NCBI GenBank assembly: GCA_965655095.1
Contig: OZ296652.1
Location: forward strand, 57,660,001-57,724,000
DNA: 64,000 nucleotides
Reading direction: 5' to 3'
Source of the DNA: Haplodiscus bocki
Lineage: Eukaryota
Made by a program: the position numbers and the translations under genes. The notes under the pieces were generated by a model. The model made no database searches. It was not told where the DNA came from and saw only the letters and a list, made by a program, of their open reading frames with translations. Positions within the stretch are counted from its first letter, which is position 1; each line of letters opens with the position of its first letter. Shown here one piece after another: positions 6,001 through 55,860 of this stretch.

Positions 6001-6050
6001 CTGTTTCCTTGTTCTTTTCGAGCCCCAACTGTGTCAATTGCAGACCTAGG
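1..6050. repeat. Subfamily A domain: ~4.3 units, period 1399-1403 bp
   Basis: Anchor spacings are 1401, 1399, 1402 and 1403. Diagnostic strings such as gccaggagattaattacga, cccttagttagtccgccc and tatactccacccaacttggctg are absent from B-type units. Confidence 0.93.
435..1835. repeat. Example HOR unit (A type) made of 8 diverged ~175-bp monomers M1-M8
   Basis: The degenerate motif starts at 435 (gcagacctaggttcagga), 617 (gaaaaaaaggctgccaggagat), 796 (gcagacctagttccgaggagat), 968 (gcataccaagcttccaggagat), 1151 (ggagccccaaactcctggtaat), 1334 (gcagaactagcgtctga), 1500 (gcagacgttgattccagaa) and 1663 (attgacccatgttcggg, weakest). The next M1 is at 1836. Spacings are 163-183 bp. Confidence 0.85.
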
Positions 6051-9000
6051 TTCAGGATATAAGAGTCAATATTGACGAAACAAATGCAAAACCAAGAAAT
6101 GCTGCAACTTTTTCCGTCAAACATCCTATCGAACTGCTTCCACAGGGACTCAAAAATTTTTAGAGAGATTGGAGTGTCATTGCTTCGCTATGTGAAGTTT
6201 GTGCCAAATGCAGAAAGATTTCCATGAGATCAAGTACGAGTTAACGAAGTTTCTTGCTTAGTATCAAAAAACGCTGAATTTTAGGCTTTTTTTCGCAAAA
6301 AGGCTCATCAAAACCTCTGGCCGCATGGAAAAACTTTCTGAAGAATGGAGGTTCATCCTTATGTCTTATACAATGTAGGATCATTCACAGAGATAGCTGC
6401 CAGTTGATAGAAGACAAACTGACGACAATTGATCGTAACAACTTCTTCGTTGGAGCACTTTGAGGAACGATCGCTTCGCAAATTTTATGCCCGGAAATAA
6501 ACGATTTTATCCGCAAAAAAATAGCTTTCCCTGCGATGGTTGTGCAAACTTGGGAGTCCTTTGCATACCTAGCGTCCAGGATAAAAGACTGGAAAATACG
6601 ACACTCATCATCAAAGCCTGAAGAATCTAAGATTTGAGCCGTCTACGGAAATCGGTCCTTGGTTTGTTTGCCCGCAACAATAAAGGTTCTTCTGTTGAAA
6701 GGCCTTACCAGTACGCACATGTGAAATTTTAGTCGCTTGGAGACCAATTTCACAGGAAAAAAATCAGAATTTTCCGTAATGTCTGCATTGAAGCCAGAAA
6801 ATGCTGAGTTTTCGAAAGTATTCTGCAAAACGACTCTCAGAATGTTGTTAACAACAACTGGAACTGTTTCTCTCAAACAACGATCTCTATAGTATACCCA
6901 CTCAAAACTGAAGTCACTGGCTGAACTAGCGTCTAAGAGACAAAGTATAAATTGGCAAAATCTCCCCGAACGAATTCTATTTTCCAGGCTACATGGCTAA
7001 AATCGAAAAAACTATCAACGCAACTGGAAACCACATTCTGAAAAACTGGAATTCTTTCACCCTGGCTAAGCAAGAAGTTAGCCAATTTCCGAGGTAGTTC
7101 TCAGAAAAGTACGATTGTCACCGTAATAAACACACTACGATGTAGGCTGAAAAACTGAACTTTCATCGGTCAAAAAGAATTCCACAACCCTTTGAACGGA
7201 AAAAAACATAGTGTGTGACACTCTGATTCATCTTGTTAAACTCCTGGAAAAACTGATCCATATTCGAAGTTAGGGGTTGAGTGTATGAGTACATAAATTC
7301 AAACAAGCTGAGTTTTCAGGTTCCTCTCTCGCAAAAATTGATCAAAAAAAATCTAACTGAACCAAAAGTTAATTTACTGGAAACTTCTGTTTCCCTGTTC
7401 TTTTCGAGCCGTAAGTGTCAATTGCAGACATAGGTTCAGGATATAAAACGATACAAGTGCCAAACCAAGATATGCTGCAACTCCAACTTTTTCCGTCAAA
7501 CATCCTATCGAATTGCTTCCACAGCGACTCAAATACTTTTAGAGACAGATTGGAGTTTCATTGCTTCGCTATGTGAAGTTTGTGCCAATTGCAGAAAGAC
7601 TTCCACGAGATCAAGTACGGTTTAACGAAGTTTCTTGCTTAGTACCGAAAAAAACGCTGAATCTGAAGCTTTTTTTCGCAAAAAGACTCATCAAAACCTC
7701 TGGCCGCATGGAAAAACTTTCTGAAGAATGGAGGTTCATCTTTATGTCTTATACAATGTAGGATCATTCACAGAGATAGCTGCCAGTTGATAGAAGACAA
7801 ACTGACGACAATTGATCGTAACAACTTCTTCGTTGGAGCACTTTCAGGAACACTAGCTTCGCAAATTTTATGCCCGCAACTTGACAATTGTATCCACAAA
7901 AAATGGTTTTTCCAGCAATGCCTGTGCAAACTTGGGAGTCGTTTGCATACCTAGCGTCCAGGATAAAAGACTGAAAACACGACGATCGTCATAAACGCCT
8001 GAAAAATCTAAGATTTGAGCCTTCAGCGGAAATCGGTCCTTGGTTTGTTTGTCCGCAACAATAAAAGTTCTTCTGATGAAAGGCCTTACCAGTACGCCCA
8101 TGTGAATTTTTTGTCACTTGGAGACCCATTTCTCAGGAAAAAAATCAGAATTTTCCGAAACGTCTGCATTGAAGCCAGAAATCGCTGAGTTTTCGAAAGT
8201 ATTCACAAAACAACTCAGAATATTGTTAGCATCAACTCGAACTGTTCCTCTGAAACAACGACCTCTTTAGTATGCCTAGCGGCAGAACTAGGCACCTGCA
8301 GAACTAGCGTCTGAAAGCACTGTAAAAGTCGGCGAAGTCTCCATTCGACGAAATCTATCTTCCAAGCTACTTGGCTAAAATTAAAAGAACTAAGACAGAA
8401 AATCAAAAATATTCAATGTCTGGAAGATTTGGGTTTTTGACCATAGCTGAACAACAATCTAGCCAATTGCAGACATACTTTCCAGAAAAAAAGCAATTTC
8501 ATCCGACTATACACCTTGCGAAGTAGGTGGAAAAGTCTGAAAATTTTATCGCTCCAAAAGACCACCAGAACTTTTTCAACCGTAAAAATTATAGTTTTTG
8601 ACATACTGATTGAGTTTAAATTTTCGGGAAAATTTTCTATATTCGAATTTAGACATTAAGCGTATGACACCATAAATTCAAACAAGCTGAGTTTTCAGGC
8701 TCGTTCTTCGCAAAAGTTGTTTAATGAAACTGAAGGCAACGAAAAGACAGTTTGTTGAACACTACTGCTTCCCTGTTCTATCCGAGCATAACCTCTGTCA
8801 ATTCCAAACCTAGGTTCAGGATATAAAAGTCAAAATTGACGAAACAATTCCAGAAACGCCAAGATTTGCTGCATTTCAACTTTTCCCCTCAGACATCCTT
8901 TGGATATGTTTTAATCGCAAATCTGTCTTTTTTGCCAAGATATTGGAGTCTAATTTCTACGCCGATGTAATGTTTCAATGGCTTGAAAAATAGTTTGCCA

Positions 9001-12000
9001 GGAGATTAATTACCACATAGAGAATAGCGTTCTCGAACGCAGTAAGTATCTGAATTTTCAAGCTCGTTTCGCAAACCAAATCAATCCTTTTCACCGCAAA
9101 GAAATGTAATCCCTTATAGAATTGGCATTTCTCGATTCGCCTTTTCCAAAAAAAGAGATACTCGCAGACCTAGTTTTGAGGAGATAAACGGCAAATTAAC
9201 GAAGCATCTTCCAAACATCTCTGCCTTTAGTATACTCAGCACAACTGTCATCGAAGTTTTTATGGCCGCAATTAAATATTTTTATCCGGAAAAATAGCTT
9301 GTACTGCGATGCTTGTGCAAACTTGGGAGTCAGTCGCATACCAAGCTTCCAGGAGATAGGACTAGAATTTAGCTAAACATCATCATCAAAGCTTGGAAGA
9401 ATGTGAAGTTTTAGGCTTTCTGCCAAAATAAGCCCTTAGTTAGTCCGCCCGCAACATTAGCGACTTCTATGATGGAACGAGGTATTACTAATACGCCTAT
9501 GTAAATTTCTAGTCACTTAGAGCCCCAAACTCCTGGTAATACGAGCATATGTTACCAAAACGGCTTCATCAGAGCCAGGAAAGCTAAATTTCGAAGGTTT
9601 TTCTGCGTAACAACACAACGAAAATTGTAAATTGCAAGTGAAACTATTTCTCGGAAACAATGAGGTCTCTTTGGTAGGATTACTCAAAAACGAAGTCACC
9701 TGCAGAACTAGTGTCCGAAAGACAACGTAATGGTTGGCTAAATCTCCGAACGAGCTATATACTCCACCCAACTTGGCTGCAATGAAAAGAACTATGACAG
9801 CAAACCAAAACTGATTTCTAATAGAATTGAGTTCTCTGAACGGGGCTAAGTAGGAATCTTGCCACCTGCAGACGTAGATTCCAGAAAAAAAGACTCAACA
9901 GACTAGAGGCATTACCAACTGGGCTGAATTCTGGACATCGAAGCAACTCATAGAATATTGTTAACATCAGCAGGAACTGTTTCTCTGAAACCACGATTTC
10001 TTTAGTAAGCCTACTGAAAACTGGAGTCACTGGCTGAACTAGCGTCTAAGATACAAAGTATAAATTGGCGAAATCTCTCCCGAACGAATTCTCTTTTCCA
10101 GGCTCCATGGCTAAAATCGAAAGGTTTATGACCTCAACTCAAAACCACATTCTGACAATCTGGAATTCTTTCACCCTGGCTAAACAAGAATTTAGCCAAT
10201 TTCAGGGGTAGTTCTCAGAAAAGTACGATTGTCACCGTAATAAACACACTACGATGTAGGCTGAACAACTGAACTTTTTTAGCTCAAAAGGAATTCCACA
10301 ACTCTTTGAACGTCGAAAAATCATAGTGTGTGACACTCTGATTTATCTTGTTAAAATTCTGGAAAAACTGATCCATATTCGATGTTAGACGTTGAGTGTA
10401 TGAGTAAATAAGTTCAAACAAGCTGAGTTTTCAGGTTCCTCTCTCGCAAAAGTTGATCAATAAAATTGAACTGAACGAAAAGTTATTTTACTGGAAATTT
10501 CTGTTTCCCTGTTTCTTTCGCGCCTTAACTGTGTCAATTGCAGACCTACATTCAGGAGATAAAAGTCTATATTGACGAAACAATTGGAAAGCCAAGAAAT
10601 CCTGCAACTCCAACTTTCTCCGTCAAACATCCTATCGAACTGCTTCCACAGCGACCCAATTATTTTTTGAGACAGATTGGAGTGTCATTGCTTCGATATG
10701 TGACGTTTTGGCCAATTGCAGAAAGACTTCCACGAGATCAAGTACGATTTAACGAAGTTTCTTGCTTGGTATCAAAAAAACGCTGAATCTTAAGATTTTT
10801 TTTCGCGAAAAAGACTCATCACAACCTCTGGCCGCATGGTAAAACTTTCCCAAGAATGGAGCTTAATCTCTATGTCTTATCCAATGTAGGATCATTCACA
10901 GAGATAGCTGCCAGTTGATAGAAGACAAACTGACGAAAATTGATCGTAACAACTTCTTCGTTGGAGCACTTTGAGGAACACTAGCTTCGCAAATTTTATG
11001 CCCGCAACTTGACAATTCTATCCGCAAAACATATTTCCAGCGATGCCTGTGGAAACTTGGGAGTCCTTTGCATATCTAGCCTCCAGGATAAAAGACTGGA
11101 AAATAGGACACTCATCATCAAAGCCTGAAAAATCTAAGATTTGAGCCGTCTACGGAAATCGGTCCATGGTTTGTTTGCCCGCAACAATAAAGGTTCTTCT
11201 GTTGAAAGGCCTTAGCAGTACGCACATACGAAATTTTAGACGCTCGGAGACCAGTTTCACAGGGAAAAAGTCAGAATTTTCCGAAACGTCTGCATTGAAG
11301 CCAGAAATTGCTGAGTTTTCGAAAGTATTCACAAAACAACTCAGAATATTGTTAGCATCAACTCGAACTGTTCCTCTGAAACAACGACCTCTTTAGTATG
11401 CCTAGCGGCAGAACTAGGCACCTGCAGAACTAGCGTCTGAAAGCACTGTAAAAGTCGGCGAAGTCTCCATTCGACGAAATCTTTCTTCCAAGCTACTTGG
11501 CTAAAATTAAAAGAACTAAGACAGAAAATCAAAAATATTCAATGTCTGGAAGATTTGGGTTTTTGACCATAGCTGAACAACAATCTAGCCAATTGCAGAC
11601 ATACTTTCCAGTAAAAAAGCAATTTCATCCGACTATACACCTTGCGAAGTAGGTGGAAAAGTCTGAAAATTTTATCGCTCCAAAAGACCACCAGAACTTT
11701 TTCAACCGTAAAAATTATAGTTTTTGACATACTGATTGAGTTTAAATTTTCGGGAAAATTTTCTATATTCGAATTTAGACGTTAAGCGTATGACACCATA
11801 AATTCAAACAAGCTGAGTTTTCAGGCTCGTTCTTCGCAAAAGTTGTTCAATGAAACTGAAGGCAGCGAAAAGACAGTTTGTTGAACACTACTGCTTCCCT
11901 GTTCTATCCGAGCATAACCTTTGTCAATTCCAAACCTAGGTTCAGGATATAAAAGTCAAAATTGACGAAACAATTCCAGAAACGCCGAGATTTGCTGCAT

Positions 12001-15000
12001 TTCAACTTTTCCCCTCAGACATCCTTTGGATATGTTTTAACCGCAAATCTGTCTTTTTTGCCAAGATATTGGAGTCTAAGTTCTACGCCGATGTAATGTT
12101 TCAATCGCTTGAAAAATAGTTTTTCAGGAGATTAATTACCACATAGAGAATAGCGTTCTCGAACGCAGAAAGTATCTCAATTTTCAAGTTCGTTTCGCAA
12201 ACCAAATCAATCGTTTTCACCGCAAAGAAATGTAATCCCTTATAGAATTGGCACTTCTCGATTCGCCTTTTCCAAAAAAAGAGATATTCGCAGACCTAGT
12301 TTTGAGGAGATAAACGGCAAATTAACGAAGCATCTTCCAAACATCTCTGCCTTTACGGTACTCAGCACAACTGTCATGGAAGTTTTTATGGCCGCAATTA
12401 AATATTTTTATCCGGAAAAATAGCTTGTACTGCGATGCTTGTGCAAACTTGGGAGTCAGTCGCATACCAAGCTTCCAGGAGATAGGACTAGAATTTAGCT
12501 AAAGATCATCATCAAAGCTTGGAAGAATAAGCAGTTTTATGCTTTCTGCCAAAATAAGCCCTTAGTTAGTCCGCCCGCAGCATTAGCAATTTCTATGATG
12601 GAACGAGGTATTACTAATACGCCTATGTAAATTTCTAGTCACTTGGAGCCCCAAACTCCTGGTAAAACGAGCATATGTTACCATAACGGCTTCATCAGAG
12701 CCAGGAAAGCTAAATTTCGAAGGTTTTTCTGCGTAACAACACAACGAAAATTGTAAATTGCAAGTGAAACTATTTCTCGGAAACAATGAGGTCTCTTTGG
12801 TAGGATTACTCAAAAACGAAGTCACCTGCAGAACTAGTGTCCGAAAGACAACGTAATGGTTGGCTAAATCTCCGAACGAGCTATATACTCCACCCAACTT
12901 GGCTGCAATGAAAAGAACTATGACAGCAAACCAAAACTGATTTCTAATAGAATTGAGTTCTCTGAACGGGGCTAAGTAGGAATCTTGCCACCTGCAGACG
13001 TAGATTCCAGAAAAAAAGACTCAACAGACTAGAGGCATTACCAACTGGGCTGAATTCTGGACATCGAAGCAACTCATAGAATATTGTTAACATCAGCAGG
13101 AACTGTTTCTCTGAAACCACGATTTCTTTAGTAAGCCTACTGAAAACTGGAGTCACTGGCTGAACTAGCGTCTAAGATACAAAGTATAAATTGGCGAAAT
13201 CTCTCCCGAACGATTTCTCTTTTCCAGGCTCCATGGCTAAAATCGAAAGGTTTATGACCTCAACTCAAAACCACATTCTGACAATCTGGAATTCTTTCAC
13301 CCTGGCTAAACAAGAATTTAGCCAATTTCAGAGGTAGTTCTCAGAAAAGTACGATTGTCACCGTATTAAACACATTACGAAGTGGGGTGAAAACTGAAAA
13401 AAGTTACAGCTCAAAAAGAACTCCACAACTCTTGGAACGGCAAAAAATCAAAGTGTGTGACACTCTGATTGATCTTGTTAAAATTCTGGAAAAACTGATC
13501 CATATTCGATGTTAGACGTTGAGTGTATGAGTAAATAAATTCAAACAAGCTGAGTTTTCAGGTTCCTCTCTCGCAAAAGTTGATCAATAAAATTGAACTG
13601 AACGAAAAGTTATTTTACTGGAAATTTCTGTTTCCCTGTTTTTTTTCGAGCCTGAACTGTGTCAATTGCAGACCTACATTCAGGAGATAAAAGTCTATAT
13701 TGACGAAACAATTGCAAAGCCAAGAAATCCTGCAACTCCAACTTTCTCCGTCAAACATCCTATCGAACTGCTTCCACAGCGACCCAATTATTTTTAGAGA
13801 CAGATTGGAGTGTCATTGCTTCGATATGTGACGTTTTGGCCAATTGCAGAAAGACTTCCACGAGATCAAGTACGATTTAACGAAGTTTCTTGCTTGGTAT
13901 CAAAAAAACGCTGAATCTTAAGATTTTTTTTCGCGAAAAACACTCATCACAACCTCTGGCCGCATGGTAAAACTTTCCCAAGAATGGAGCTTAATCTCTA
14001 TGTCTTATCCAATGTAGGATCATTCACAGTGATAGCTGCCAGTTGATAGAAGACAAACTGACGAAAATTGATCGTAACAACTTCTTCGTTGGAGCACTTT
14101 CAGGAACACTAGCTCCGCAAATTTAATGCCCGCAAATAAACGATTTTATCCGCAATAAATGGTTTTTCCTGCGATGGTTGTGCAAACTTGGGAGACGTTT
14201 ACATACCTAGCGTCAAGGATAAAAGACTGGAAAATACTACGCTCATCATCAAAGCCTGAAAAACCTAGGATTTGAGCCTTCAGCGGAAATCGGTCCTTAG
14301 TTTGTTTGGCCGCAACAATAAAGGTTCTTCTGATGAAAGGCATAACCAGTACGCACATGTGAAATTTTAGACGCTTGGAGACCAATTTCACAGGGAAAAA
14401 AATCAGAATTTTCCGAGATGTCTGCATTAAAGCCAGAAATTGCTGAGTTTCCGAAAGTATTCTGCAAAACAACTCATACAACATTGTTAACATCAACTGG
14501 AACTTTTTCTCTGAAACAACAATCGCTTTAGTACGCCTACTCAAAACTGTAGTCAGTGGTTGAACTAGCGTCTGAGACAATGTATAAATTGGCGAAATCT
14601 CTCCCGAACGAATTCTATTTTCCAGACTACATGGCTAAAATCGAAAGAACTATGACCTCAACTGAAAATCACATTCTGACAAACTGGAACTCTTTCACCG
14701 TGGCTAAGCTGGAATTTAGCCAATTTCAGAGGTACTTCTCAGAAAAGTACGATTGTCACCGTATAAAACACATTACGAAGTAGGCTGAAAAACTGAAGTT
14801 TTAAAGCTCAAAAAAACTCCATAACTCTTTGAACGGCAAAAAAATCATAGTGTGTGACACTCTGATTTATCTTGTTAAACTTCTGGAAAATCTGATCCAT
14901 ATTCGAAGCTAGACCTTTGAGTACATAAATTCAAACAAACTGAGTTTTCAGGTTCCTCTCTCGCAAAAATTGATCAATAAAATTGAACTGAACGAAAAGT

Positions 15001-18000
15001 TATTTTACTGGAAAAATCTGTTTCCCTAGTCTTTTCGAGCCTTAACTGTGTCAATTGCAGACCTAGGTTCGGGATATAAAAGTTAAAATTGACGAAACAA
15101 ATGCAAAACCAAGAAATGCTGCAACTCCAACTTTTTAGGTCAAACATCCAATCGAACTGCTTCCACAGGGACTCAAATATTTTTAGAGACAGATTGGAGT
15201 GTCATTGCTTCGCTATCTGAAGTTTTTGCCACTTGCAGAAAGGACTTCCAGTAATCACGTAGAATTTAACGATGTTTCTTGCCTAGGATCAAAAAACGCT
15301 GAAGCTTGAGCTTTTTTTCGCAAAAAGATTCATCAAAGCCTCTGGCCGCATGGAAAAACTTTCCGAAGAATGGAGCTTCATCTTTGTGTCTTGTCCAATG
15401 TGGGATCATTCACAGAGGTATCTGAAAGTTGATAGAAGACAAACTGACGAAATTTGATCGTAACAACTTCTTCGTTGGAGCACTTTGAAGAACACGCGCC
15501 GCAAATTTCATGCCCGCAACTAAACGGTTTCATCAGCAAAAAACTGGTTTTTCCTGCGATGGTTGTGCAAACTTGGGAGTCCTTTGCATACCTAACGTCC
15601 AGGATAAAAGACTGGAAAATAGGACACTCATCATCAAAGCCTGAAGAATCTAAGATTTGAGCCGCCTACGGAAATCGGTCCTTGGTTTGTTTGCCCGCAA
15701 CAATAAAGGTTCTTCAGTTGAAAGGCCTTACAAGTACGCACATGTGATAGTTTAGTCGCTTGGAGACCAATTTCCCAGGAAAGAAAGTCAGAATTTTCCG
15801 TAATGTCTGCATTGAAGCCAGAAAATGCTGAGTTTTCGAAAGTATTCTGCAAAACAACTCTTAGAATGTTGTTAACAACAACTGGAACTGTTTCTCTCAA
15901 ACAACGATCCTTAGTACGCCTACTCAAAACTGAAGTCACTGGCTGAACTAGCGTCTAAGAGACAAAGTATAAATTGGCAAAATCTCTCCCGAACGAATTC
16001 CACTTTCCAGGCTACATGGCTAAAATCGAAAGAACTATGACCGCAACTGGAAACCACATTCTGACAAACTGGAATTTTTTCAACCTGGCTCAGCAAGAAT
16101 TTAGCCAAATTTAGAGGTAGTTCTCAGAAAAGTAGGACTGTCACCGTAGTAAACACACTACCAAGTAGGCTGAACAACTGAACTTTTTTAGCTCGAAAGG
16201 AATTCCACAACTCTTTGAACGTCGAAAAATCATAGTGTGTGACACTCTGATTTTTCTTGTTAAACTTCTGGAAAAACTGATCCATATTCGATGTTAGACG
16301 TTGAGTGTATGAGTAAATAAATTCAAACAAGCTGAGTTTTCAGGTTCTTCTCTCGCAAAAGTTGATCAATAAAATTGAACTGAACGAAAAGTTATTTTAC
16401 TGGAAAGTTCTGTTTCCCTGTTCTTTTCGAACCTTAACTATGTCAATTGCAGACCTAGGTTCAGGATATAACAGTCAATATTGGCGAAACAAATGCAAAA
16501 CCAAGAAATGCTGCAACTCCAACTTTTTCCGTCAAACATCCTATCGAACTGCTTCCCCAGGGACTCAAATATTTTTAGAGACAGATTGGAGTGTCATTGC
16601 TTCGCTATGTGAAGTTTGTGCCAAGTGCAGAAAGACTTCCAAGAGATCAAGTACGAGTTAACGAAGTTTCTTGCTTAGTATCAATAAACGCTGAATTTTA
16701 GGCTTTTTTCCGCAAAAAGGCTCATCAAAACCTCTGGCCCCATGGAAAAACTTTCTGAAGAATGCAGGTTCATCTTTATGTCTTATACAATGTAGGATCA
16801 TTCACAGAGATAGCTGCCAGTTGATAGAAGACAAACTGACGACAATTGATCGTAACAACTTCTTCGTTGGAGCACTTTGAGGAACAATCGCTTCGCAAAT
16901 TTTATGCCCGGAAAAAAAAGATTTTATCCGCAAAAAAATAGCATTTCCTGCGATGGTTGTGCAAACTTGGGAGTCCTATGCATACCTAGCGTCCAGGATA
17001 AAAGACTGGACAATACGACGATCATCATCGAAGGCTAAAAAATCCAAGATTTGAGCCTTCTGCGGAAATCAGTCCTTGGTTTGTTTGCCCGCAACAATAA
17101 AGGTTCTTCTGTTGAAAGGCCTTACCAGTACGCACATGTGAAATTTTAGACGCTCGGAGACCAACTTCACAGGGAAAAAATCAGAATTTTCCGTAACGTC
17201 TGCATTAAAGCCAGAAATTGCTGACTTTTCGAAAGTAGTCGGCAAAACAAGTCATAAAATATTGTTAACATCAACTGGAACTGTTTCTCTCAAACAACGA
17301 TCTTCAGTACGCCTACTCAAAAATGAAGTCACTGGCTGAACAAGCGTCTAAGAGACAAAGTATAAACTGGCAGAATCTCTCTCGAACGAATTCTATTTTC
17401 CAGGCTACATGGCTAAAATCGAAAGAACTATGACCGCAACTGAAAACCACATTCTGACAAACTGAAATTCTATCACCCTGGCTAAGCAAGAAGTTGGCCA
17501 ATTTCAAAGGTAGTTCTCAGAAAATTAGGATTGTCATCGTATTAAACACATTACGAAGTAGGCTGAAAAACGGGAAACTTTTTATAGCTCAAAACGAACT
17601 ACACAATTCTTTGAACGGCAAAAAATCAAAGTGTGTGACACTCTGATTGATCTTGTTAAAATTCTGGAAAAACTGATCCATATTCGATGTTAGACGTTGA
17701 GTGTATGAGTAAATAAATTCAAACAAGCTGAGTTTTCAGGTTCCTCTCTCGCAAAAGTTGATCAATAAAATTGAACTGAACGAAAAGTTATTTTACTGGA
17801 AATTTCTGTTTCCCTGTTTTTTTCGAGCCTTAACTGTGTCAATTGCAGACCTAGGTTCAGGATACAAAAGTTAAAATTGACGAAACAAATGCAAAACCAA
17901 GAAATGCTGCAATTCCAACTTTTTAGGTCAAACATCCAATCGAACTGCTTCCACAGGGACTCAAATATTTTTAGATACAGATTGGAGTGTCATTGCTTCG

Positions 18001-21000: not shown

Positions 21001-21380
21001 AGCTGCCACTTGATAGAAGACAAACTGACGATAATTGATCGTAACAACTTCTTCGTTGGAGCACTTTCAGGAACACTAGCTTCGCAAATTTTATGCCCGC
21101 AACTTGACAATTCTATCCACAAAAAATGGTTTTTCCAGCGATGCCTGTTCAAACTTGGGAGTCCTTTGCATACCTAGCGTCCAGGATAAAAGACTGGACA
21201 ATACGACGATCATCATCGAAGCCTGAAAAAACTAAGATTTGAGCCTTCAGCGGAAATCGGTCTTTGGTTTGTTTGCCCGCAACAATAGGGGTCCTTCTGA
21301 TGAAAGGCCTTACCAGTACGCACATGTGAAAGTTTAGTCGCTTGGAGACCAATTTCACAGGGAAAAAAATCAGAATTTTC
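6051..21380. repeat. Left flank: heterogeneous, mosaic B-type units (mostly 1379-1399 bp) with embedded A-like and divergent D segments
   Basis: B-diagnostic strings are gatcaagtacg(a/g)tttaacgaag and acttcttcgttggagcac. Most units keep gttagacgttgagtgtatgag and aaaagtcaatattgacg. Neighbouring units differ visibly. Confidence 0.88.
8150..14095. repeat. Tandem duplication with a 3126-bp period (one 1736-bp unit plus one 1390-bp unit); shared block ~8150-10970 and ~11275-14095
   Basis: ORF pairs are offset by exactly 3126: 8215/11341, 8413/11539, 9771/12897 and 9818/12944. Both copies share the private junction ctggacatcgaagcaactc and the allele cagacctacattcaggagat. Confidence 0.93.
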
Positions 21381-45300: not shown

Positions 45301-48300
45301 CTGTTCGAGCCTTAAGTGTCAATTGCAGACATAGGTTCTGCATATAAAACCAAATATTTGCAAAACCAAGAAATGCTGCAACCCCAACTTTTTCCGTCAA
45401 ACATCCTTTCGAATTGCTTCCACAGCGACTCAAAAACTTTTAGAGACATATTGGAGTGTCATTGCTTCGCTATGTGAAGTTTTTGCCAATTGCAGAAGGA
45501 CTTCCACGAGATCAAAAAAGATTTAACCAAGTTTCTTGCTTAGTATCAAAAAACGCTGAATCTTGAGCTTTTTTCGCAAAAAGACTCATGAAAACCTCTG
45601 GCCGCATGGAAAAACTCTCCGAAGAATGGAGCTTCATCTTTGTGTCTTATCCAATGTAGGACCAATCATAAAGATAGCTGCCAGTTGATAGAAAACAAAC
45701 TGACGAGATTTGATCGTAACAACTTCTTCGTTGGAGCACTTTGAGGAACACTCGCATCACAAACTTCATGCCCGCAACTAAACGATTTTATCTGCAAAAA
45801 AGTTTTTCCTGCGATGGTTGTGCAAACTTGGGAGTCGTTTGCATACCTAGCGTCCAGGATAAAAGACTGGAAAATAAGGCGATCCTCATCAAAGCCTGAA
45901 AAATCTAAGAATTGAGCCTTCAGCGGAAATCGGTCCTTGGTTTTTTTGCCCGCAACAATAAGGGTTCTTCTGATGAAAGGCCTTACCAGTACGCACATGT
46001 GAAACTTTAGTCGCTTGGAGACCAATTTCACAGGGAAAAGAAATCAGAATTTTCCCTAATGTCTTCATTAAAGCCAGAAATTGCTGAGTTTTTGAAAGTA
46101 TTCCGCAAAACAACTCAAATAATATTGTTAACATCAACTGGAACTGTTTCTCTGAAACAACGATCTCTATAGTATGCCTACTCAAAACTGAAGTCACTGG
46201 CTGAACTAGCGTCTAAGAGACAAAGTATAAATTGGCAAAATCTCTCCCGAACGAATTCTATTTTCCAGGCTACATGGCTAAAATCGAGAAAACTATAAAC
46301 GCAAATGGAAACCACATTCTGACAAACTGGAATTCTTTCACCCTGGTTAAGCAAGAAGTTAGCCAATTTTAGAGGTAGTTCTCAGAAAAGTAGGATTGTA
46401 ACCGTATTGAACACATCAAGAGGTAGGCTGAAAAACTGAAAACTTTCAGAGCTCAAAAAAACTCCATAACTCTTTGAACGGCAAAAAAATCGTAGTGTGT
46501 GACACTCTAATTTATCTTGTTAAACTTCTGGAAAAACCGATCCATATTCGAAGCTAGACGTATGAGTACATAAATTCAAACAAGCTGAGTTTTCAGGTTC
46601 CTCTCTCGCAAAAAATTGATCAATAAAATTGAACTGAACCAAAAGTTATTTTACTGGAAACGTCTGTTTCCCTGTTCTGTTCGAGCCTTAAGTGTCAATT
46701 GCAGACATAGGTTCAGCATATAAAACGAAACAATTGCAAAACCAAGAAAGGCTGCAACCCCAACTTTTTTCGTCAAACAACCTATCGAATTGCTTCCAGA
46801 GCGACTCAAATACTTTTAGAGACAGACTGGAGTGTCATTGCTTCGCTATGTGTAGTTTTTGCCAATTGCAGAAGGACTTCCACGAGATCAAAAAAGGTTT
46901 AACCAAGTTTCTTGCTTAGTATCAAAAAACGCTGAATCTTGAGCTTTTTTCGCAAAAAGACTCATGAAAACCTCTGGCCGCATGGAAAAACTCTCCGAAG
47001 AATGGAGCTTCATCTTTGTGTCTTATCCAATGTAGGATCAATCACAAAGATAGCTGCCAGTTGATAGAAGACAAACTGAAGACATTTGATCGTAACAACT
47101 TCTTCGTTGGAGCACTTTGAGGAACACTCGCATCAAAATTCATGCCCGCAACTAAACGATTTTATCGGCAAAAAAGTTTTTCCTGCGATGGTTGTGCAAA
47201 CTTGGGAGTCGTTTGCATACCTAGCGTCCAGGATAAAAGACTGGAAAATACGACGATCCTCATCAAAGCCTGAAAAATCTAAGAATTGAGCCTTCAGCGG
47301 AAATCGGTCCTTGATTTTATTGCCAGCAACAATAAGCGTTCTTCTGATGAAAGGCCTTACCAGTACGCACATGTGAAACTTTAGTCGCTTGGAGACCAAT
47401 TTCACAGGGAAAAAAATCAGAATTTTCCGTAATGTCTTCATTAAAGCCAGAAACTGCTGAGTTTTCGAAAGTATTCTGCAAAACAACTCATACAACATTG
47501 TTAACATCAACTGGAACTGTTTCTCTAAAACAACGATCTCTATAGTATGCCTACTCAAAACTGAAGTCACTGGCTGAACTAGCGTCTAAGAGACAAAGTA
47601 TAAATTGGCAAAATCTCTCCCGAACGAATTCTATTTTCCAGGCTACATGGCTAAAATCGAAAAAACTATCAACGCAACTGGAAACCACATTCTGACAAAC
47701 TGGAATTCTTTCACCCTGGCTAAGCAAGAAGTTAGCCAATTTCAGAGGTAGTTCTCAGAAAAGTAGGATTGTCACCGTAATAAACACATTACGAAGTAGG
47801 CTGAAAAACTGAAGTTTTAAAGCTCAAAAAAACTCGATAACTCTTTGAACGGCAAAAAAATCACAGTGTGTGACACTCTGATTTATCTTGTTAAACTTCT
47901 GGAAAAACTGATCCATATTGGAAGCTAGACGTATGAGTACATGAATTCAAACAAGATGAGTTTTCAGGTTCCTCTCTCGCAAAAAATGATCAAAAAAATT
48001 GAACTGAACCAAAAGTTATTTCACTGGAAACTTCTGTTTCCCTGTTCTGTTCGAGCCTTAAGTGTCAATTGCAGACATAGGTTCAGCATATAAAACGAAA
48101 CAATTGCAAAACCAAGAAAGGCTGCAACCCCAACTTTTTCCGTCAAACATCCTATCGAATTGCTTCCACAGCGACTCAAATACTTTTAGAGACAGATTGG
48201 AGTGTCATTGCTTCGCTATGTGAAGTTTTTGCCAATTGCAGAAGGACTTCCACGAGATCAAAAACGATTTAACCAAGTTTCTTGCTAAGTATCAAAAAGC

Positions 48301-49540
48301 GCTGAATCTTGAGCTTTTTTCGCAAAAAGACTCATGAAAACCTCTGGCCGCATGGAAAAACTCTCCGAAGAATGGAGCTTCATCTTTGTGTCTTATCCAA
48401 TGTAGGATCAATCACAAAGATAGCAGCCAGTTGATAGAAGACAAACTGACGAGCTTTGATCGTAACAACTTCTTCGTGGCAGCACTTTGAGGAACACTCG
48501 CATCACAAACTTCATGCCCGCAACTAAACGATTTTATCGGCAAAAAATTTTTTCCTGCGATGGTTGTGCAAACTTGGGAGTCGTTTGCATACCTAGCGTC
48601 CAGGATAAAAGACTGGAAAATACGACGATCCTCATCAAAGCCTGAAAAATCTAAGAATTGAGCCTTCAGCGGAAATCGGTCCTTGGTTTTTTTGCCCGCA
48701 ACAATAAGGGTTCTTCTGATGAAAGGCCTTACCAGTACGCACATGTGAAACTTTGGTCGCTTGGAGACCAATTTCACAGGGAAAAAAATCAGAATTTTCC
48801 GTAATGTCTTCATCAAAGCCAGAAATTGCTGAGTTTTCGAAAGTATTCTGCAAAACAACTCATACAATATTGTTAACATCAACTGGAACTGTTTCTCTGA
48901 AACAACGATCTCTATAGTATGCCTACTCAAAACTGAAGTCACTGGCTGAACTAGCGTCTAAGAGACAAAGTATAAATTGGCAAAATCTCTCCCGAACGAA
49001 TTCTTTTTTCCAGGCTACATGGCTAAAATCGAAAATACTATCAACGCAACTGGAAACCACATTCTGACAAACTGGAATTCTTTCACCCTGGCTAAGCAAG
49101 AAGTTAGCCAATTTCCGAGGTAGTTCTCAGAAAAGTAGGATTGTCACCGTATTAAACACATTACGAAGTAGGCTGAAAAACTGAAGTTTTAAAGCTCAAA
49201 AAAACTCCATAACTCTTTGAACGGCAAAAAAATCATAGTGTGTGACACTCTGATTTATCTTGTTAATTTTCTGGAAAAACTGATCCATATTCGAAGCTAG
49301 ACGTATGAGTACATAAATTCAAACAAGCTGAGTTTTCAGGTTCCTCTCTCGCAAAAGTTGATCAATAAAATTGAACTGAACGAAAAGTTATTTTACTGGC
49401 AAAATCTGTTTCCCTGTTCTTTTCGAGCCTTAAGTGTCAATTGCAGACATAGGTTCAGGATATAAAACGAAATAATTGCAAAACCAAGAAATGCTGCAAC
49501 CCCAACTTTTTCCGTCAAAAATCCTATCGAATTGCTTCCA
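21381..49540. repeat. Homogeneous core subfamily, ~20 units, period 1364-1376 bp
   Basis: Anchor spacings from 21902 to 49321 are all 1364-1376. Diagnostic strings are gatcaaaaaagatttaaccaag, gctagacgtatgag, ccttaagtgtcaa and atataaaacgaaac. Confidence 0.93.
24765..26135. repeat. Example HOR unit (core type) made of the same 8 monomers
   Basis: Motif starts at 24765 (gcagacatagg), 24932 (gcagaaggacttcc), 25108 (acagagatagctgcc), 25281 (gcatacgtagcgtcc), 25457 (ggagaccaatttc), 25639 (gctgaactagcgtc), 25808 (ttagagttagttctc) and 25972 (actgatccatattc). The next M1 is at 26136. Confidence 0.85.
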
Positions 49541-52500
49541 CAGTGACTCAAATATTTTTAGAGACAGATTGGAGTGTCATTGCTTCGCTATGTGAAGTTT
49601 GTGCTAATTGCAGAAAGACTTCCACGAGATCAAGTACGGTTTAACGAAGTTTCTTGCTTAGTACCGAAAAAAAACGCTGAATCTGAAGCTTTTTTTTCGC
49701 AAAAAGACTCATCAAAACCTCTGGCCGCATGGAAAAACTTTACCAGGAATGGAGCTTCATCTTTATGTCTTATCCAATGTAGGATCATTCACAGAGATAG
49801 CTGCCAGTTGATACAAGACGAACTGACGATAATTGATCGTAACAAATTCTTCGTTGGAGGACTTTGAGGAACACTCGCATCACAAACTTCATGCCCGCAA
49901 CTAAACGATTTTATCGGCAAAAAAGTTTTTCCTGCGATGGTTGTGCAAACTTGGGAGTCGTTTGCATAACTAGCGTCCAGGATAAAAGACTGGAAAACAT
50001 GACGCTCATCATCGAAGCCTGAAAAATCTAAGACTTGAGCCTTCAGCGGAAATCGGTCCTGGAATTGTTCGCCCGCAACAATAAAGGTTCTTCTGATGAA
50101 AGGCCTTACCAGTACGCACATGTGATAATTTAGTCGCTTGGAGACCAATTTTCCAGTAAAGAAAATCAGAATTTTCCGTAATGTCTGCAATAAAGCCAGA
50201 AATTGCTGACTTTTCGAAAGTATTCTGCAAAACAACTCATAGAATATTGTCAACATCAACTGGAACTGTTTCTCTCAAACAACGATCTTCAGTACGCCTA
50301 CTCAAAACTGATGTCACTGGCTGAACCAGCGTCTAAGAGACAAAGTATAAATTGGCGAAATCTCTCCCGGACGAATTCTATTTTCCAGGCTACATGGCTG
50401 AAATCGAAAGAACTATGACCTCAACTGAAAACCACATTCTGACAATCTGGAATTCTTTCACCCTGGCTAAACAAGAATTTAGCCCATTTCAGAGGTAGTT
50501 CTAAGGAAAGTACGATTGTCACCGTATTAGACACATTACGAAGTGGGCTGAAAAACTGAAAACTTTCATAGCTCAAAAAGAATTCCACAACTCTTTGAAC
50601 GGCAAAAAAACATAGTGTGTGACACTCTGATTTATCTTGTTAAACTTCTGGAAAAACTGATCCATATGCGAAGTTAGACGTTGAGTGTATGAGTACCTAA
50701 ATTCAAATAAGCTGAGTTTTCAGGTTCCTCTATCGCAAAAATTAATCAATAAAATTGAACTGAACCAAAAGTTATTTTACTGGAAACTTCTGTTTCCCTA
50801 TTCTTTTCGAGCCTTAACTGTGTCAATTGCACACCTAGGTTCAGGATATAAAACGAAACAATTGCAAAACCAAGCAATGCTGCAACTCCAACTTTTTCCG
50901 TCAAAAATCCTGTCAAATTGTTTCCACAGCGACTGAAATACTTTTAGAGACATATTGGAGTGTCATTGCTTCGCTATGTGAAGTTTTTGCCATATGCAGA
51001 AGGACTTCCAGGAGATCAAATACGATTTAACGAAGTTTCTTGCTTAGTATCAAAAAACCGTTGAATTTAAAGCTTTTTTTCGCAAGAAGACTCATCAAAA
51101 CGTCTGGCCGCATGGAAAAACTTTCTCAAGAATGGAGCTTCATCTTTATGTCTTATCCAATGTAGCATCATTCGCAGAGATAGCTGCCAGTTGATAGAAG
51201 ACAAATTGACGAAACTTGATCGTAACAAGTTCTTAGCTGGAGCACTTTGAGGAACACTCGCTTGGTAAATTTTATGCCCGCAACTAAACGAGTTTATCCG
51301 CAAAAAAAGGTTTTCCTGCGATGGTTGTGCAAACCTGGTAGTCACATGCATACCTAGCGTCCAGGATAAAAGACTGGAAAATACGACGATCCTCATCAAA
51401 GCCTGAAAAATCTAAGATTTGAGCCTTCAGCGGAAATCGGTCCTTGGTTTGTTTGCCCACAACAATAAAAGTTCTTCTGATCAAAAGCCTTACCAGTACG
51501 CCCATGTGAACGTTTTGTCACTTGGAGACCCATTTCCCAGGAAAAAAAAATCAGAATTTTCCGTAATGTCTTCATTAAAGCCAGAAAGTGCTGAGTTTTC
51601 GAAAGTATTCTGCAAAACAACTCATACATATTGTTAACATCAACTGGAACTGTTTCTCTGAAACAACGATCTCTTTAGTACGCCTACTCAAGACTCAAGT
51701 CACCGGCTGAACTAGCGTCTCAGAGACAAAGTAAAAATTGGCAAAATCTCTCCCAAACGAATTCTGTTCTCCAGGCTACATGGCTAAAATCGAAAGAACT
51801 ATGACAGCAACTGAAAACCACATTCTGACAAACTGGAATTCTTTCACCATGGCTAAGCAAGAATTTGGCCAAGTTTAGAGGTAGTTCTCAGAACAGTAAG
51901 ATGTTCACCGTATTAAACACATTAAGAGGTAGGGGGAAAAACTGAAAACTTTCATAGCTCAAAAAGAATTCCACAACTCTTTGAACGGCAAAAAAACATA
52001 GTGTGTGACACTCTGATTTATCTTGTTAAACTTCTGGAAAAACTGATCCATATGCGAAGTTAGACGTTGAGTGTTTGAGTACCTAAATTCAAATAAGCTG
52101 AGTTTTTAGGTTCCTCTATCGCAAAAAATAATCAATAAAATTGAGCTGAACCAAAAGTTATTTTACTGGAAACTTCTGTTTCCCTATTCTTTTCGAGCCT
52201 TAACTGTGTCAATTGCACACCTAGGTTCAGGATATAAAACGAAACAATTGCAAAACCAAGGAAAGCTGCAACTCCAACTTTTTCCGTCAAACATTCTATC
52301 GAATTGTTTCCACAGCGACTGAAATACTTTTAGACATATTGGAGTGTCATTGCTTCGCTATGTGAAGTTTTCGCCATATGCAGAAGGACTTCCAGGAGAT
52401 CAAGTACGATTTAACAAAGTTTCTTGCTTAGTATCAGAAAACCGCTGAATCTAAAGCTTTTTTTCGCAAGAAGACTCATCAAAACGTCTGGCCGTATGGA

Positions 52501-55500
52501 AAAACTTTCCCAAGAATGGAGCTTCATCTTTATGTCTTATCCAATGTAGCATCATTCGCAGAGATAGCTGCCAGTTGATAGAAGACAAGCGGACGAAACT
52601 TGATCGTAACAAGTTCTTAGCTGGAGCACTTTGAGGAACACTCGCTTGGTAAATTTTATGCCCGCAACTAAACGAGTTTATCCGCAAAAAAAGGTTTTCC
52701 TGCAATGGTTGTGCAAACCTGGTAGTCACATGCATACCTAGCGTCCAGGATAAAAGACTGGAAAATACGACGATCCTCATCAAAGCCTGAAAAATCTAAG
52801 ATTTGAGCCTTCAGCGGAAATCGGTCCATGGTTTGTTTGCCCAAAACAATAAATGTTCTTCTGATGAAAAGCCTTACCAGTACGCCCATGTGAACGCTTT
52901 GTCACTTGGAGACCCATTTCCCCGAAAAATAAACAGAATTTTCCCAAATGTCAGCATTAAAGCCAGAAATTGCTGAGTTTTCAAAAGTATTCTGCAAAAC
53001 AACTCATAGAATATTGTTAATATCAACTGGAACCGTTTCTCTGAAACAATGATCTCTTTAGTACGCCTACTCAAAACTGAAGTCACCGGCAGAACTAGCG
53101 TCTAAGAGACAAAGTATACATTGGCAAAACCTCTCCCGAACGAATTCTGTTTTCCAGGCTACATGGCTAAAATCGAAAGAACTATGACAGCAACGGCAAA
53201 CCACATTCTGACAAACTGGAATACTTTCAGCCTGACTAAGCAAAAATTTGGACAGTTTTAGTGGTAGTTCTCAGAAAAGTAGGATTGTCACCGTATTAAA
53301 CACATTTTGAGGTTGGCTGGAAAACTGAAAATTTTGATAGGTCAAAAAGAAATCCACAACTCTGTGAACGGAAAAAAACATAGTGTGTGACACTCTGATT
53401 TATCTTGTTAAACTCCTGGAAAAACTGATCCATATTCGAAGTTAGGCGTTGAGTGTATGAGTACATAAATTCAAACAAGCTGAGTTTTCAGGTTCCTCTC
53501 TCGCAAATGTTGACCAATGAAATTGAACTGAACCAAAAGTTATTTTACTGGAAACTTCTGTTCCTCTGTTCTTCTCGAGCCCTAACTGTGTCAATTGCAG
53601 ACCTAGTTCCAGGATATAAAAGTCAATATTGACAAAACAATTGCAAAGCCAAGAAATGCTGCAACTCCAACTTTTTCCGTCAAACATCCTATCGAACTGC
53701 TTCCACAGCGACTCAAATAGTTTTAGAGACAGATTGGAGTGTCATTCCTTCGCTATGTGAAGTTTTTGCCACTTGCAGAAATGACTTCCAGTTATCACGT
53801 ACGATTTAACGAAGTTTCTTCCTTAGTATCAAAAAAATGCCGGATCTAAAGCTTTTTTCACAAAAAGACTCATCAAAACCTCTGGCCGCATGGAAAAAAT
53901 TCTGAAGAATGGGGTTTCATCATTATGTCTTATCTAAAGTAGGATGATTAACAGAGCTAGCTGCCAGTTGATAAAAAACAAACTGACGAGGTTTGATCGT
54001 AACAACTTTTACCTTGGAGCACTTTCAGGAAAACTCACCTCGCACTTTTCATGCCCGCAACTAAACATTATATTGCCAAAAAAAGTTATTATTGGGCAAT
54101 GCTTGTTCAAACTTGGAGTCATTCGCATACCTATCTTCCAGCAGATGAGACTGGAAACTACCTGAAGATCCTCATCAAACCCTGAAACAATATAAGCTTT
54201 AAGTCGTCAGCGTAAATTGGTCCTTGGTTTGTTTGCGAGCAAGATTAAGGTTCTTCTGATGAAAGGCCTTACCAGTACGCCCATGTGAAACTTTAGTTAC
54301 TTGGAGACCCATTTCCCAGGAAAAAATCAGAATTTTCCGTAATGTCAGCGTTAAAGGCAGAAATTGCTGAGTTTTCAAAAGTATTCTGCAAAACAACTCG
54401 TAGAATCTTGTTAACATCAACTGGAACTGTTTCCCTGAAACAATGATCTCTTGAGTACGCCTACTCAAAACTGAAGTCACTGGCAGAACTAGCGTCTAAG
54501 AGACAAAAAAGAAATTGGCGAAGTCTCTCCCTAACGAATTCTATTTTCCAGGCTACATGGCTAAAATCGAAAGAACTACGACAGCAACGGAAAACCACAT
54601 TCTGAAAAACTGGAGTTCTTTCACCATGGCTAAGCAAGAATTTGGCCAATTTTAGAGGTTGTTCTCAGAAAAGTAGTATTGTCACCGTATTAAACACATT
54701 ACGAAGTAGGCTGAAAAACTGAAGTTTTAAAGCTCAAAAAAACTCCATAACTCTTTGAACGGCAAAAAAATCATAGTGTGTGACACTCTGTTTCATCTTG
54801 TTAAACTTCTGGAAAAACTGATCCATATTCGAAGTTAGACGTTGAGTGTATGAGTACATAAATTCAAACAAGCTGAGTTTTCAGGTTCCTCTCTCGCAAA
54901 AGTTGATCAATGAAATTGAACTGAACCAAAAGTTATTTTACTGGAAACTTCTGTTCCTCTGTTCTTCTCGAGCCCTAACTGTGTCAATTGCAGACCTAGT
55001 TCCAGGATATAAAAGTCAATATTGACAAAACAATTGCAAAGCCAAGAAATGCTGCAACTCCAACTTTTTCCGTCAAACATCCTTTGGAACTGCTTCCACA
55101 GCCACTCAAATATTTTTAGAGACAGATTGGAGTGTCATTGCTTCGCTAGGTGAAGTTTTTGTCACTTGCAGAAAAGACTTCCAGTAATCGCGAACGATTT
55201 AACGAAGTCTCTTCATTAGTATCAAATAAATGCCGAATCTGAAACTTTTTTTCCCAAAAAGACTCATTAAACCCTCTGGCCGCATGGAAAAACTTTCCGA
55301 AGAAGGGAGCTTCATCTTTGTGTCTTATCCAATGTAGGATCAATCACAGAGATAGCTGCCAGTTGATAGAAGACAAACTGACGAAATTTGATCGTAACAA
55401 CTTCTTCGTTGGAGCACTTTCAAGAACACTAGCTTCGCAAATTTTATGCCCGCAACTTGACAAATTTATCCGCAAAAAATTGTTTTTCCAGCGATGCTTG

Positions 55501-55860
55501 TGCAAAATTTGGGAGTCGTTTGCATACCTAGCGTCCAGGATAAAAGTCTGGAAAATACGACGATCATCATTGAAGCCTGAAAAATCTAAGATTTGAGCCT
55601 TCAGCGGAAATCGGTCCTTGGTTTGTTTGTCCGCAACAATAAAAGTTCTTCTGACGAAAGGTCTTACCAGTACGCCAATGTGGAACTTTAGTTACTTGGA
55701 GACCCATTACCCCGGAAAAAAAACAGAATTTTCCGAAATGTCAGCATTAAAGCCAGAAATTGCTGAGTTTTCAAAATTATTCTGCAAAACAACTCCTAGA
55801 AAAATGTTAACATGAACTGGAACTATTTCTCTGAAACAATGATCTATTTAGTACGCCTAC
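49541..55860. repeat. Right flank: heterogeneous B-type units, period 1382-1396 bp
   Basis: Flank alleles return (gttagacgttgagtgtatgag, aactgtgtcaa, gatcaagtacg). Anchor spacings are 1384, 1386, 1382, 1393 and 1396. Confidence 0.85.

What the first reader, a model, noticed from the sequence alone, without database searches (positions are those of the whole stretch)
6051..55860. Layered, mirror-symmetric array: homogeneous core inside older flanks that match each other (candidate centromeric satellite)
Seen: units on both sides of the 21.4-49.5 kb core share alleles the core lacks. gatcaagtacggtttaacgaagtttcttgcttagtaccgaaaaaaa occurs at ~7610 and ~49630. The 7-bp tgagtgt and 11-bp gtcaatattga segments occur on both sides, and cacttgcagaa..cttccagtaatc occurs at ~15230 and ~55165. 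Established: layered expansion, where a new variant amplifies inside an array and pushes older layers outward, is described for human centromeric alpha satellite. Inference: the same process acted here, and the locus may be centromeric or pericentromeric. The core is small (~28 kb), so it could equally be a non-centromeric or relic array.
Basis: partly seen in the sequence, partly recalled or inferred. Interest (0 to 1): 0.7.

Follow-up and report, generated by a model that had tools for sequence, protein, structure and literature searches.

The report
Single-locus layered 1.4-kb satellite array
This is a real 92-kb block of non-coding tandem repeats with a young, uniform middle inside older copies, but the two sides do not mirror each other and nothing shows it is a centromere, so it looks like an ordinary locus-specific satellite.

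Summary
All quoted motifs sit where stated, and a homogeneous core (window 21773-49191, 20 units, 96.9% mean identity) lies between more diverged units.

The array is larger than the finding. The whole window, and 91.6 kb of contig C5 in all, is one uninterrupted head-to-tail array of 1.37-1.40-kb units. Each unit is an ancient octamer of ~175-bp monomers.

Mirror symmetry fails:
- Of 42 columns where both flanks agree against the core, 39 are ancestral states that the core lost.
- Left-right identity (88.4%) is lower than left-core (91.0%) or right-core (89.6%).
- An AU test rejects a left+right clade (p = 3e-7).
- The left flank groups with the core, and the right side forms an age ladder.
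- Only the unit at 49192 carries a small patch of left-type derived alleles.

The core is not the youngest block. A 7-unit block starting at 56129 is 98.5% identical.

The 1.4-kb unit was found only at this locus. An intact PNUTS-like gene lies 9.4 kb away. The one point for a centromere is position, at 48% of a 119-Mb contig.

My reading is a locus-specific higher-order-repeat satellite shaped by local unequal exchange. Earlier notes of this scan describe similar layered arrays elsewhere in this genome.

The parts
1..5782 (+). D-type units: one partial and four full (starts 177, 1579, 2978, 4380). They are 90-94% alike and about 67% identical to the core. The block continues leftward outside the window to about -11000.
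5783..7166 (+). Hybrid unit. About the first 250 columns are D-type and the rest is A-lineage (89% to the core). It marks the D/A boundary.
7167..13407 (+). Two copies of a ~3.1-kb superunit. Each is an A-type unit (7167, 10280), a D-type unit (8550, 11676; 98% alike) and a 340-bp repeat of the last two monomers (9939-10279, 13065-13398). That is 18 monomers per copy.
   Evidence: (period 3126)
13408..21772 (+). Left flank: six units, 88-95% alike and 90-93% identical to the core. The last one (20376) is a recombinant, left-type in its 5' part and core-type in its 3' part.
21773..49191 (+). Homogeneous core: 20 units of 1364-1375 bp, mean pairwise identity 96.9%, monophyletic. Derived markers include a 7-bp deletion and AAAAAA in place of AGTACG.
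49192..50569 (+). Mosaic border unit. It shares 25 derived columns with the core and 9 with left-flank units 17586-21772.
50570..56128 (+). Right flank: four heterogeneous units (86-95% alike). They branch successively deeper than the left flank. The unit at 53339 groups with the far-right block.
56129..64000 (+). Far-right homogeneous block: 7 units, continuing to 65832 beyond the window. Mean identity is 98.5%, and 85% to the core. It is the youngest multi-unit block in the array.

Best explanation
This is a non-coding, locus-specific satellite array of 91.6 kb on contig C5. Its 1.37-1.40-kb unit is an ancient higher-order repeat of eight strongly diverged ~175-bp monomers.

The array evolves by local, mostly in-register unequal exchange and short segmental duplication between neighbouring units. 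Several stretches have been re-amplified independently and at different times:
- the 20-unit core;
- a younger 7-unit block to its right;
- a 5-unit D-type block to its left;
- two two-copy superunits.

Units towards the array ends escape homogenisation and are the most diverged. The alleles that both flanks share against the core are ancestral states that the founder of the core had lost.

Shown here: the anatomy, the phylogeny, the polarity of the shared alleles, and the hybrid border units. Inferred: the exchange mechanism, and the absence of centromere function.
For: - The whole window tiles with units on the + strand, with no gap over 36 bp.
- The full extent is 91.6 kb: 61 full and 13 partial units.
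- Rfam, tRNA and long-ORF scans find nothing conserved.
- Internal matches occur only at multiples of ~175 bp, with none in shuffles, and there are eight monomer hits per unit in all five subfamilies.
- Block identities are core 96.9%, far-right 98.5%, outer-right superunit 99.8% and D block 95.6%.
- The core is monophyletic. The flanks are paraphyletic and the right side forms a ladder in physical order.
- 39 of 42 flank-shared columns are core-derived.
- Hybrid units sit at block borders: 5783, 20376 and 49192.
- The two superunits arose by near in-phase jumps of 2 and 4 monomers.
- The 1.4-kb unit was found only at this locus.
- Short contigs from four public runs of one study cover 27-30 of the 30 bins of window 19000-24999. 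One contig in each run bridges the 21773 junction.
Against: - The array lies at 48.4% of a 119-Mb contig.
- It is built of nucleosome-length monomers.
- It is free of TE insertions.
- A second, unrelated satellite lies 39 kb away.

All four are compatible with a (peri)centromeric setting. No chromatin, FISH or Hi-C data could be consulted. The genome search tool scores only the best candidates, so 'single locus' is a lower bound.
Confidence: 0.75

Rival explanations
1. The array is the functional centromere, or inner pericentromere, of chromosome C5. It would be evolving by kinetochore-associated layered expansion as in human alpha satellite.
For: - Mid-contig position, 57.66 of 119.1 Mb.
- A higher-order repeat of ~175-bp monomers.
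- A young monophyletic core inside older units, with divergence rising outward.
- Uniform orientation without interruptions.
- Another satellite nearby.
Against: - Only 91.6 kb in total, with a 27-kb core.
- The unit was found at one locus only.
- An intact PNUTS-like ORF lies 9.4 kb from the edge, and an ABL-like exon 75 kb away on the other side.
- No mirror symmetry.
- The youngest block is off-centre.
- The old layers lack the TE insertions and inversions seen in human flanks.
- Layering also occurs in non-centromeric arrays.
- Earlier, unchecked scan notes list many similar arrays in this genome, one of them on the same contig.
Confidence: 0.08
2. The array was seeded from a short run of ~175-bp monomers carried by a dispersed mobile element. 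Earlier scan notes suggest Helitron-type elements. The run then grew in place. This concerns origin only and is compatible with the best explanation.
For: - The best-conserved 26-nt monomer motif, at up to 3 mismatches, occurs at about 39 sites outside the array on at least 11 large contigs. The reversed control gives 1.
- One of those sites (C2:16.53 Mb) also keeps the second motif at monomer spacing.
- Three degenerate monomers lie 1.7 kb beyond the left edge.
- Short dispersed repeats match the left margin.
- Earlier notes report the same monomer size class in mobile elements (not checked here).
Against: - No transposase or helicase ORF and no terminal structure was seen next to the array.
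- The first 1.7 kb of the right flank is unique.
- The dispersed motif sites could not be fetched, so their context is unknown.
Confidence: 0.25
3. The layered pattern is an assembly artefact, from collapsed or mis-joined repeats.
For: Tandem arrays are error-prone in assemblies. An N gap lies 52 kb left of the array's left edge, 68 kb left of the window.
Against: - There are no N in the window.
- The graded, phylogenetically ordered divergence and the hybrid border units are not what collapse produces.
- Contigs from four runs cover the left flank/core junction at 97% identity or more, though these runs may come from the assembled sample.
Confidence: 0.03

Closest known systems
Human alpha-satellite higher-order-repeat arrays with layered expansion (Altemose et al., bioRxiv 10.1101/2021.07.12.452052)
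   Same: - Nucleosome-length monomers are stacked into a kilobase higher-order repeat.
- A younger homogeneous block is nested in older, more diverged copies.
- Divergence rises towards the array ends.
   Different: - 92 kb instead of megabases.
- The higher-order repeat was found on one chromosome only.
- Monomers are about 42% alike, against 50-70% or more.
- The flanks are not mirror images.
- The youngest block is off-centre.
- There are no TE insertions or inversions in the old layers.
- No kinetochore evidence exists.
Locus-specific macrosatellites such as human D4Z4 and DXZ4 (own knowledge)
   Same: - A kilobase-sized unit in a single-locus array of tens of copies.
- It lies next to ordinary genes.
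- It is shaped by unequal exchange.
   Different: - This unit carries no ORF or known RNA.
- It is itself a fossil octamer of a 175-bp satellite.
- No epigenetic role is known.
Euchromatic and dispersed satellite DNAs linked to mobile elements (review PMC10048060, seen only in the listing)
   Same: The monomer motif is scattered over many chromosomes, while long arrays are local.
   Different: A link to a mobile element was not shown for this array.

Membership tests
Layered-expansion centromeric array (alpha-satellite type) | A young, homogeneous, monophyletic core nested inside older repeats of the same family | tested here: met
   The core clade has 100/100 support and 96.9% identity. The flanks are 88-92%.
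Layered-expansion centromeric array (alpha-satellite type) | Mirror symmetry: layers on the two sides belong to the same variant or age class | tested here: not met
   The AU test rejects a left+right clade (p = 2.9e-7). Left-right identity of 88.4% is below flank-core identity. 39 of 42 shared columns are ancestral. The outer layers are different lineages. The single exception is the mosaic unit at 49192.
Layered-expansion centromeric array (alpha-satellite type) | Older flanks decay: TE insertions, inversions, other satellites | tested here: not met
   All units are on the + strand and no gap exceeds 36 bp over 91.6 kb.
Layered-expansion centromeric array (alpha-satellite type) | CENP-A or kinetochore on the youngest layer | not testable with these tools
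   No chromatin data. The four runs found have no library type on record and none is on record as RNA.
Layered-expansion centromeric array (alpha-satellite type) | The family forms the main array at one site per chromosome | tested here: not met
   Three unit queries (core, left edge, right edge) hit only C5:57.64-57.74 Mb. Only a short monomer motif is dispersed. The tool's counts are lower bounds.
Higher-order-repeat satellite | The unit is built of several diverged copies of a shorter monomer, and units are more alike than monomers | tested here: met
   Internal hits occur only at multiples of ~175 bp, with 0 in shuffles. There are eight hits per unit. Identity is 42% between slots and 71% for the same slot across subfamilies.
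Locus-specific macrosatellite | A tandem unit of 1 kb or more confined to one locus | tested here: met
   Unit 1.37-1.40 kb, 61 full units, one locus.

The most novel reading that the evidence does not exclude
The array is the centromere of this chromosome in a non-bilaterian animal. Earlier scan notes call the genome a stony coral. That would give the first sequence-level cnidarian centromere. It would show that higher-order repeats of nucleosome-length monomers with nested young cores arise at centromeres far outside vertebrates and plants.
Probability: 0.07. Interest if true: 0.75.

Novelty: new member of a known kind. Interest (0 to 1): 0.25.

Why it matters
The result is mainly a caution. 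A homogeneous core between flanks that share alleles looks like centromeric layered expansion, but shared ancestral alleles give the same picture in any tandem array that has had a local re-amplification. Polarising the alleles with outgroup units and testing the flank clade separates the two cases.

The array is also a clean, uninterrupted example of how a kilobase satellite records its own history of local amplifications. It adds to a pattern of many such arrays in this genome.

Tried and rejected
- Tandem Repeats Finder missed the array because its period limit is 500 bp.
- Rfam, tRNA and ORF scans found nothing in the unit. A gene array (rDNA, histone, tRNA) is therefore rejected.
- A left+right flank clade was tested and rejected. 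A narrower version, left flank plus the units at 49192, 50570 and 51956, was also rejected (p = 0.008).
- A ten-monomer (~137 bp) reading of the unit was not supported. Internal matches fall at multiples of ~175 bp.
- A sequence-only covariance model of the monomer (R1) could not be run on the genome. The tool failed three times.
I did not try to get them another way.
- The strict two-motif pattern was too insensitive. It gave 2 hits outside the array, one of them at control level.
- No run on record as RNA holds the stretch, so transcription is untested.
- The neighbouring 1.70-kb satellite shows no relation to this monomer and no internal periodicity.
- CpG observed/expected (0.70-0.87) is close to the flanks (0.88-0.94). 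There is no clear methylation-decay signal.
- The organism was not identified here. Run and organism names are coded.
Full report
**What is there.** A k-mer spacing scan and a BLAST of one unit against the window show that all 64 kb, not only 6051-55860, is one head-to-tail array on the + strand. The units are 1.37-1.40 kb. A profile of the unit tiles the window with 45 full units, two end fragments and two 340-bp pieces.

The window is C5:57660001-57724000 of a 1.50-Gb assembly, and contig C5 is 119.1 Mb. With 30 kb fetched on each side, the array runs from -15598 to 76046 in window coordinates. That is 91.6 kb, with 61 full and 13 partial units. It is uninterrupted: one strand only, and no gap over 36 bp. 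Rfam, tRNA and ORF scans find nothing in the unit.

**Fine structure of the unit.** Single-sequence nhmmer searches used 176-bp pieces of five subfamily consensuses against their own unit. They give 10-37 internal hits each, all at offsets near 175, 350, 525, 700, 875, 1050 or 1225 bp. Shuffled units give none.

An iterated monomer profile finds exactly eight hits per unit in every subfamily, and the aligned monomers share clear motifs. Slots are about 42% alike within a unit. The same slot is about 71% alike across subfamilies. The unit is therefore a very old octamer of a ~175-bp monomer.

This agrees with another first-reader note on this window (s1-381258). It does not support a ten-monomer base unit. 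It does fit the 8+2-monomer variant flagged at 9920-9965 (s1-381348).

**Blocks, from left to right**:
- two very diverged edge units;
- D-type units (about 67% to the core), with a 5-unit stretch at 95.6%;
- a D/A hybrid unit at 5783;
- two copies of a 3.1-kb superunit, each an A unit, a D unit and a repeat of the last two monomers;
- six left-flank units (91.2% alike);
- the 20-unit core, 21773-49191 (96.9%);
- a mosaic unit at 49192;
- four heterogeneous right-flank units;
- a 7-unit far-right block from 56129 (98.5%);
- one intermediate unit;
- two copies of a 3.5-kb superunit (99.8%);
- one last old unit.

The two superunits come from jumps back by about 340 and 707 bp, near in-phase with 2 and 4 monomers. 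With only two events this is weak evidence that monomer homology guides exchange.

The claim that the flanks match each other does not hold.
- Mean identity is 88.4% left-right, 91.0% left-core and 89.6% right-core.
- I polarised the alignment columns with the outer subfamilies. Of 42 columns where both flank consensuses agree against the core, 39 are core-derived, 2 are ambiguous and 1 is flank-derived.
- The 7-bp tgagtgt segment is present in all non-core lineages, including both array ends. It is missing only in the core, the unit at 49192 and the unit at 14804. So it is a deletion on the core's stem.
- In the 45-mer region the core has derived changes, AAAAAA for AGTACG and C for G.

**Trees.** In the 45-unit ML tree the core is monophyletic (100/100) and the flanks are paraphyletic. 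An AU test rejects a left+right flank clade at p = 2.9e-7. A narrower version is rejected at p = 0.008.

In the 61-unit tree the left flank, the A units of the 3.1-kb superunit, the hybrid at 5783 and the unit at 49192 group with the core (SH-aLRT 99). The right side is a ladder whose branching order follows physical order out to the array end. The D-type lineage plus the left edge is the other main branch. The two sides are therefore not the same layer.

**What remains of the layering idea.** The core is a recent amplification nested in older units, and identity to it falls outward on both sides.

The border units are recombinants. The unit at 20376 switches from left-type to core-type. The unit at 49192 shares 25 derived columns with the core and 9 with units 17586-21772, in separate patches. 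This one unit shows that left-type sequence also lies to the right of the core. It fits a core that expanded inside a left-type stretch, but the mirrored layer is one unit thick.

The core is not the youngest part of the array. The array looks like a patchwork of independent local amplifications, not one expanding centre.

**Centromere question.**

For:
- The array lies at 48.4% of the contig.
- It has nucleosome-length monomers.
- It is clean of insertions.
- An unrelated 1.70-kb satellite of about 28 kb lies 39 kb to the right.

Against:
- Three unit queries (core, left edge, right edge) find the family only at this locus.
- The array is small.
- An intact 892-aa ORF with a TFIIS-type N-terminal domain and a C-terminal CCCH finger lies 9.4 kb from the left edge. 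I read this architecture as PNUTS/PPP1R10-like from my own knowledge.
- A 660-aa ORF ending in an F-actin-binding domain lies 75 kb to the right. I read it, also from my own knowledge, as an ABL-like last exon.
- The paper that documents layered expansion describes mirror symmetry and decaying flanks with TE insertions and inversions. It also says that expansion patterns occur in non-centromeric arrays.
- Earlier, unchecked scan notes describe many similar layered kilobase satellites in this genome, one of them 36 Mb away on the same contig.

No chromatin data are available. The only runs holding the sequence are four from one study with no library type on record. Their short contigs cover 27-30 of the 30 bins of window 19000-24999, and one contig in each run bridges the 21773 junction.

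**Origin.** The most conserved 26-nt monomer motif, at up to 3 mismatches, occurs 86 times in the genome. About 39 of these lie outside the array, on at least 11 large contigs, against 1 for the reversed control. One of those sites also keeps a second motif at monomer spacing. Three degenerate monomers lie 1.7 kb beyond the left edge.

Relatives of the monomer are therefore dispersed. Whether they sit in mobile elements, as earlier notes suggest, could not be tested.

**Limits.**
- The organism is coded and was not identified here. 'Coral' comes only from earlier notes.
- The genome search scores only the best candidates.
- The N gap at C5:57592316-57592515 was noted and left alone.

**Verdict.** The mirror symmetry is an effect of shared ancestral alleles, and the centromere reading is unsupported.

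Noticed in passing
L001:2290-4968 (-), C5:57632290-57634968: An intact 892-aa single-exon ORF with a TFIIS-type helical domain (Med26, residues 100-150) and a C-terminal CCCH zinc finger. I read the architecture as PNUTS/PPP1R10-like. Its 5' end faces the array, 9.4 kb away.
   Followed up: partly
L015-L017, about C5:57.775-57.803 Mb: An unrelated satellite array of about 28 kb with a 1.70-kb unit and further spacings of 3.38 and 4.71 kb. GC is 0.42-0.43. It shows no match to the 175-bp monomer profile and no internal periodicity.
   Followed up: partly
L008:8414-9214 (+) and L009:5334-6134 (-), around the N gap at C5:57592316-57592515: Two nearly identical 267-aa ORFs without a Pfam match lie in inverted orientation on either side of an assembly gap, next to a 1.77-kb tandem spacing. 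This may be a palindromic duplication or an assembly effect. The gap was left as it is.
   Followed up: no
L018:7076-9055 (-), C5:57811076-57813055: A 660-aa ORF ending in an F-actin-binding domain (PF08919, E = 4e-4, just under the curated cut-off). It looks like the large last exon of an ABL-type kinase gene.
   Followed up: no
L012:5505-7512 (-), C5:57625505-57627512: A reverse-transcriptase fragment (RVT_1, E = 1.5e-18) with adjacent ORFs. It is a decayed retrotransposon 17 kb left of the array.
   Followed up: no
L002:2311-2735 (window -17689 to -17265): Three degenerate ~175-bp monomers sit 1.7 kb outside the left end of the array. The stretch between them and the array matches short repeats dispersed on many contigs.
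   Followed up: partly
window 9939-10279 and 13065-13398; L004:4636-6744: The structural variants of the unit arise from jumps back of about 340 bp (2 monomers) and about 707 bp (4 monomers). Both are near in-phase with the fossil 175-bp periodicity.
   Followed up: partly
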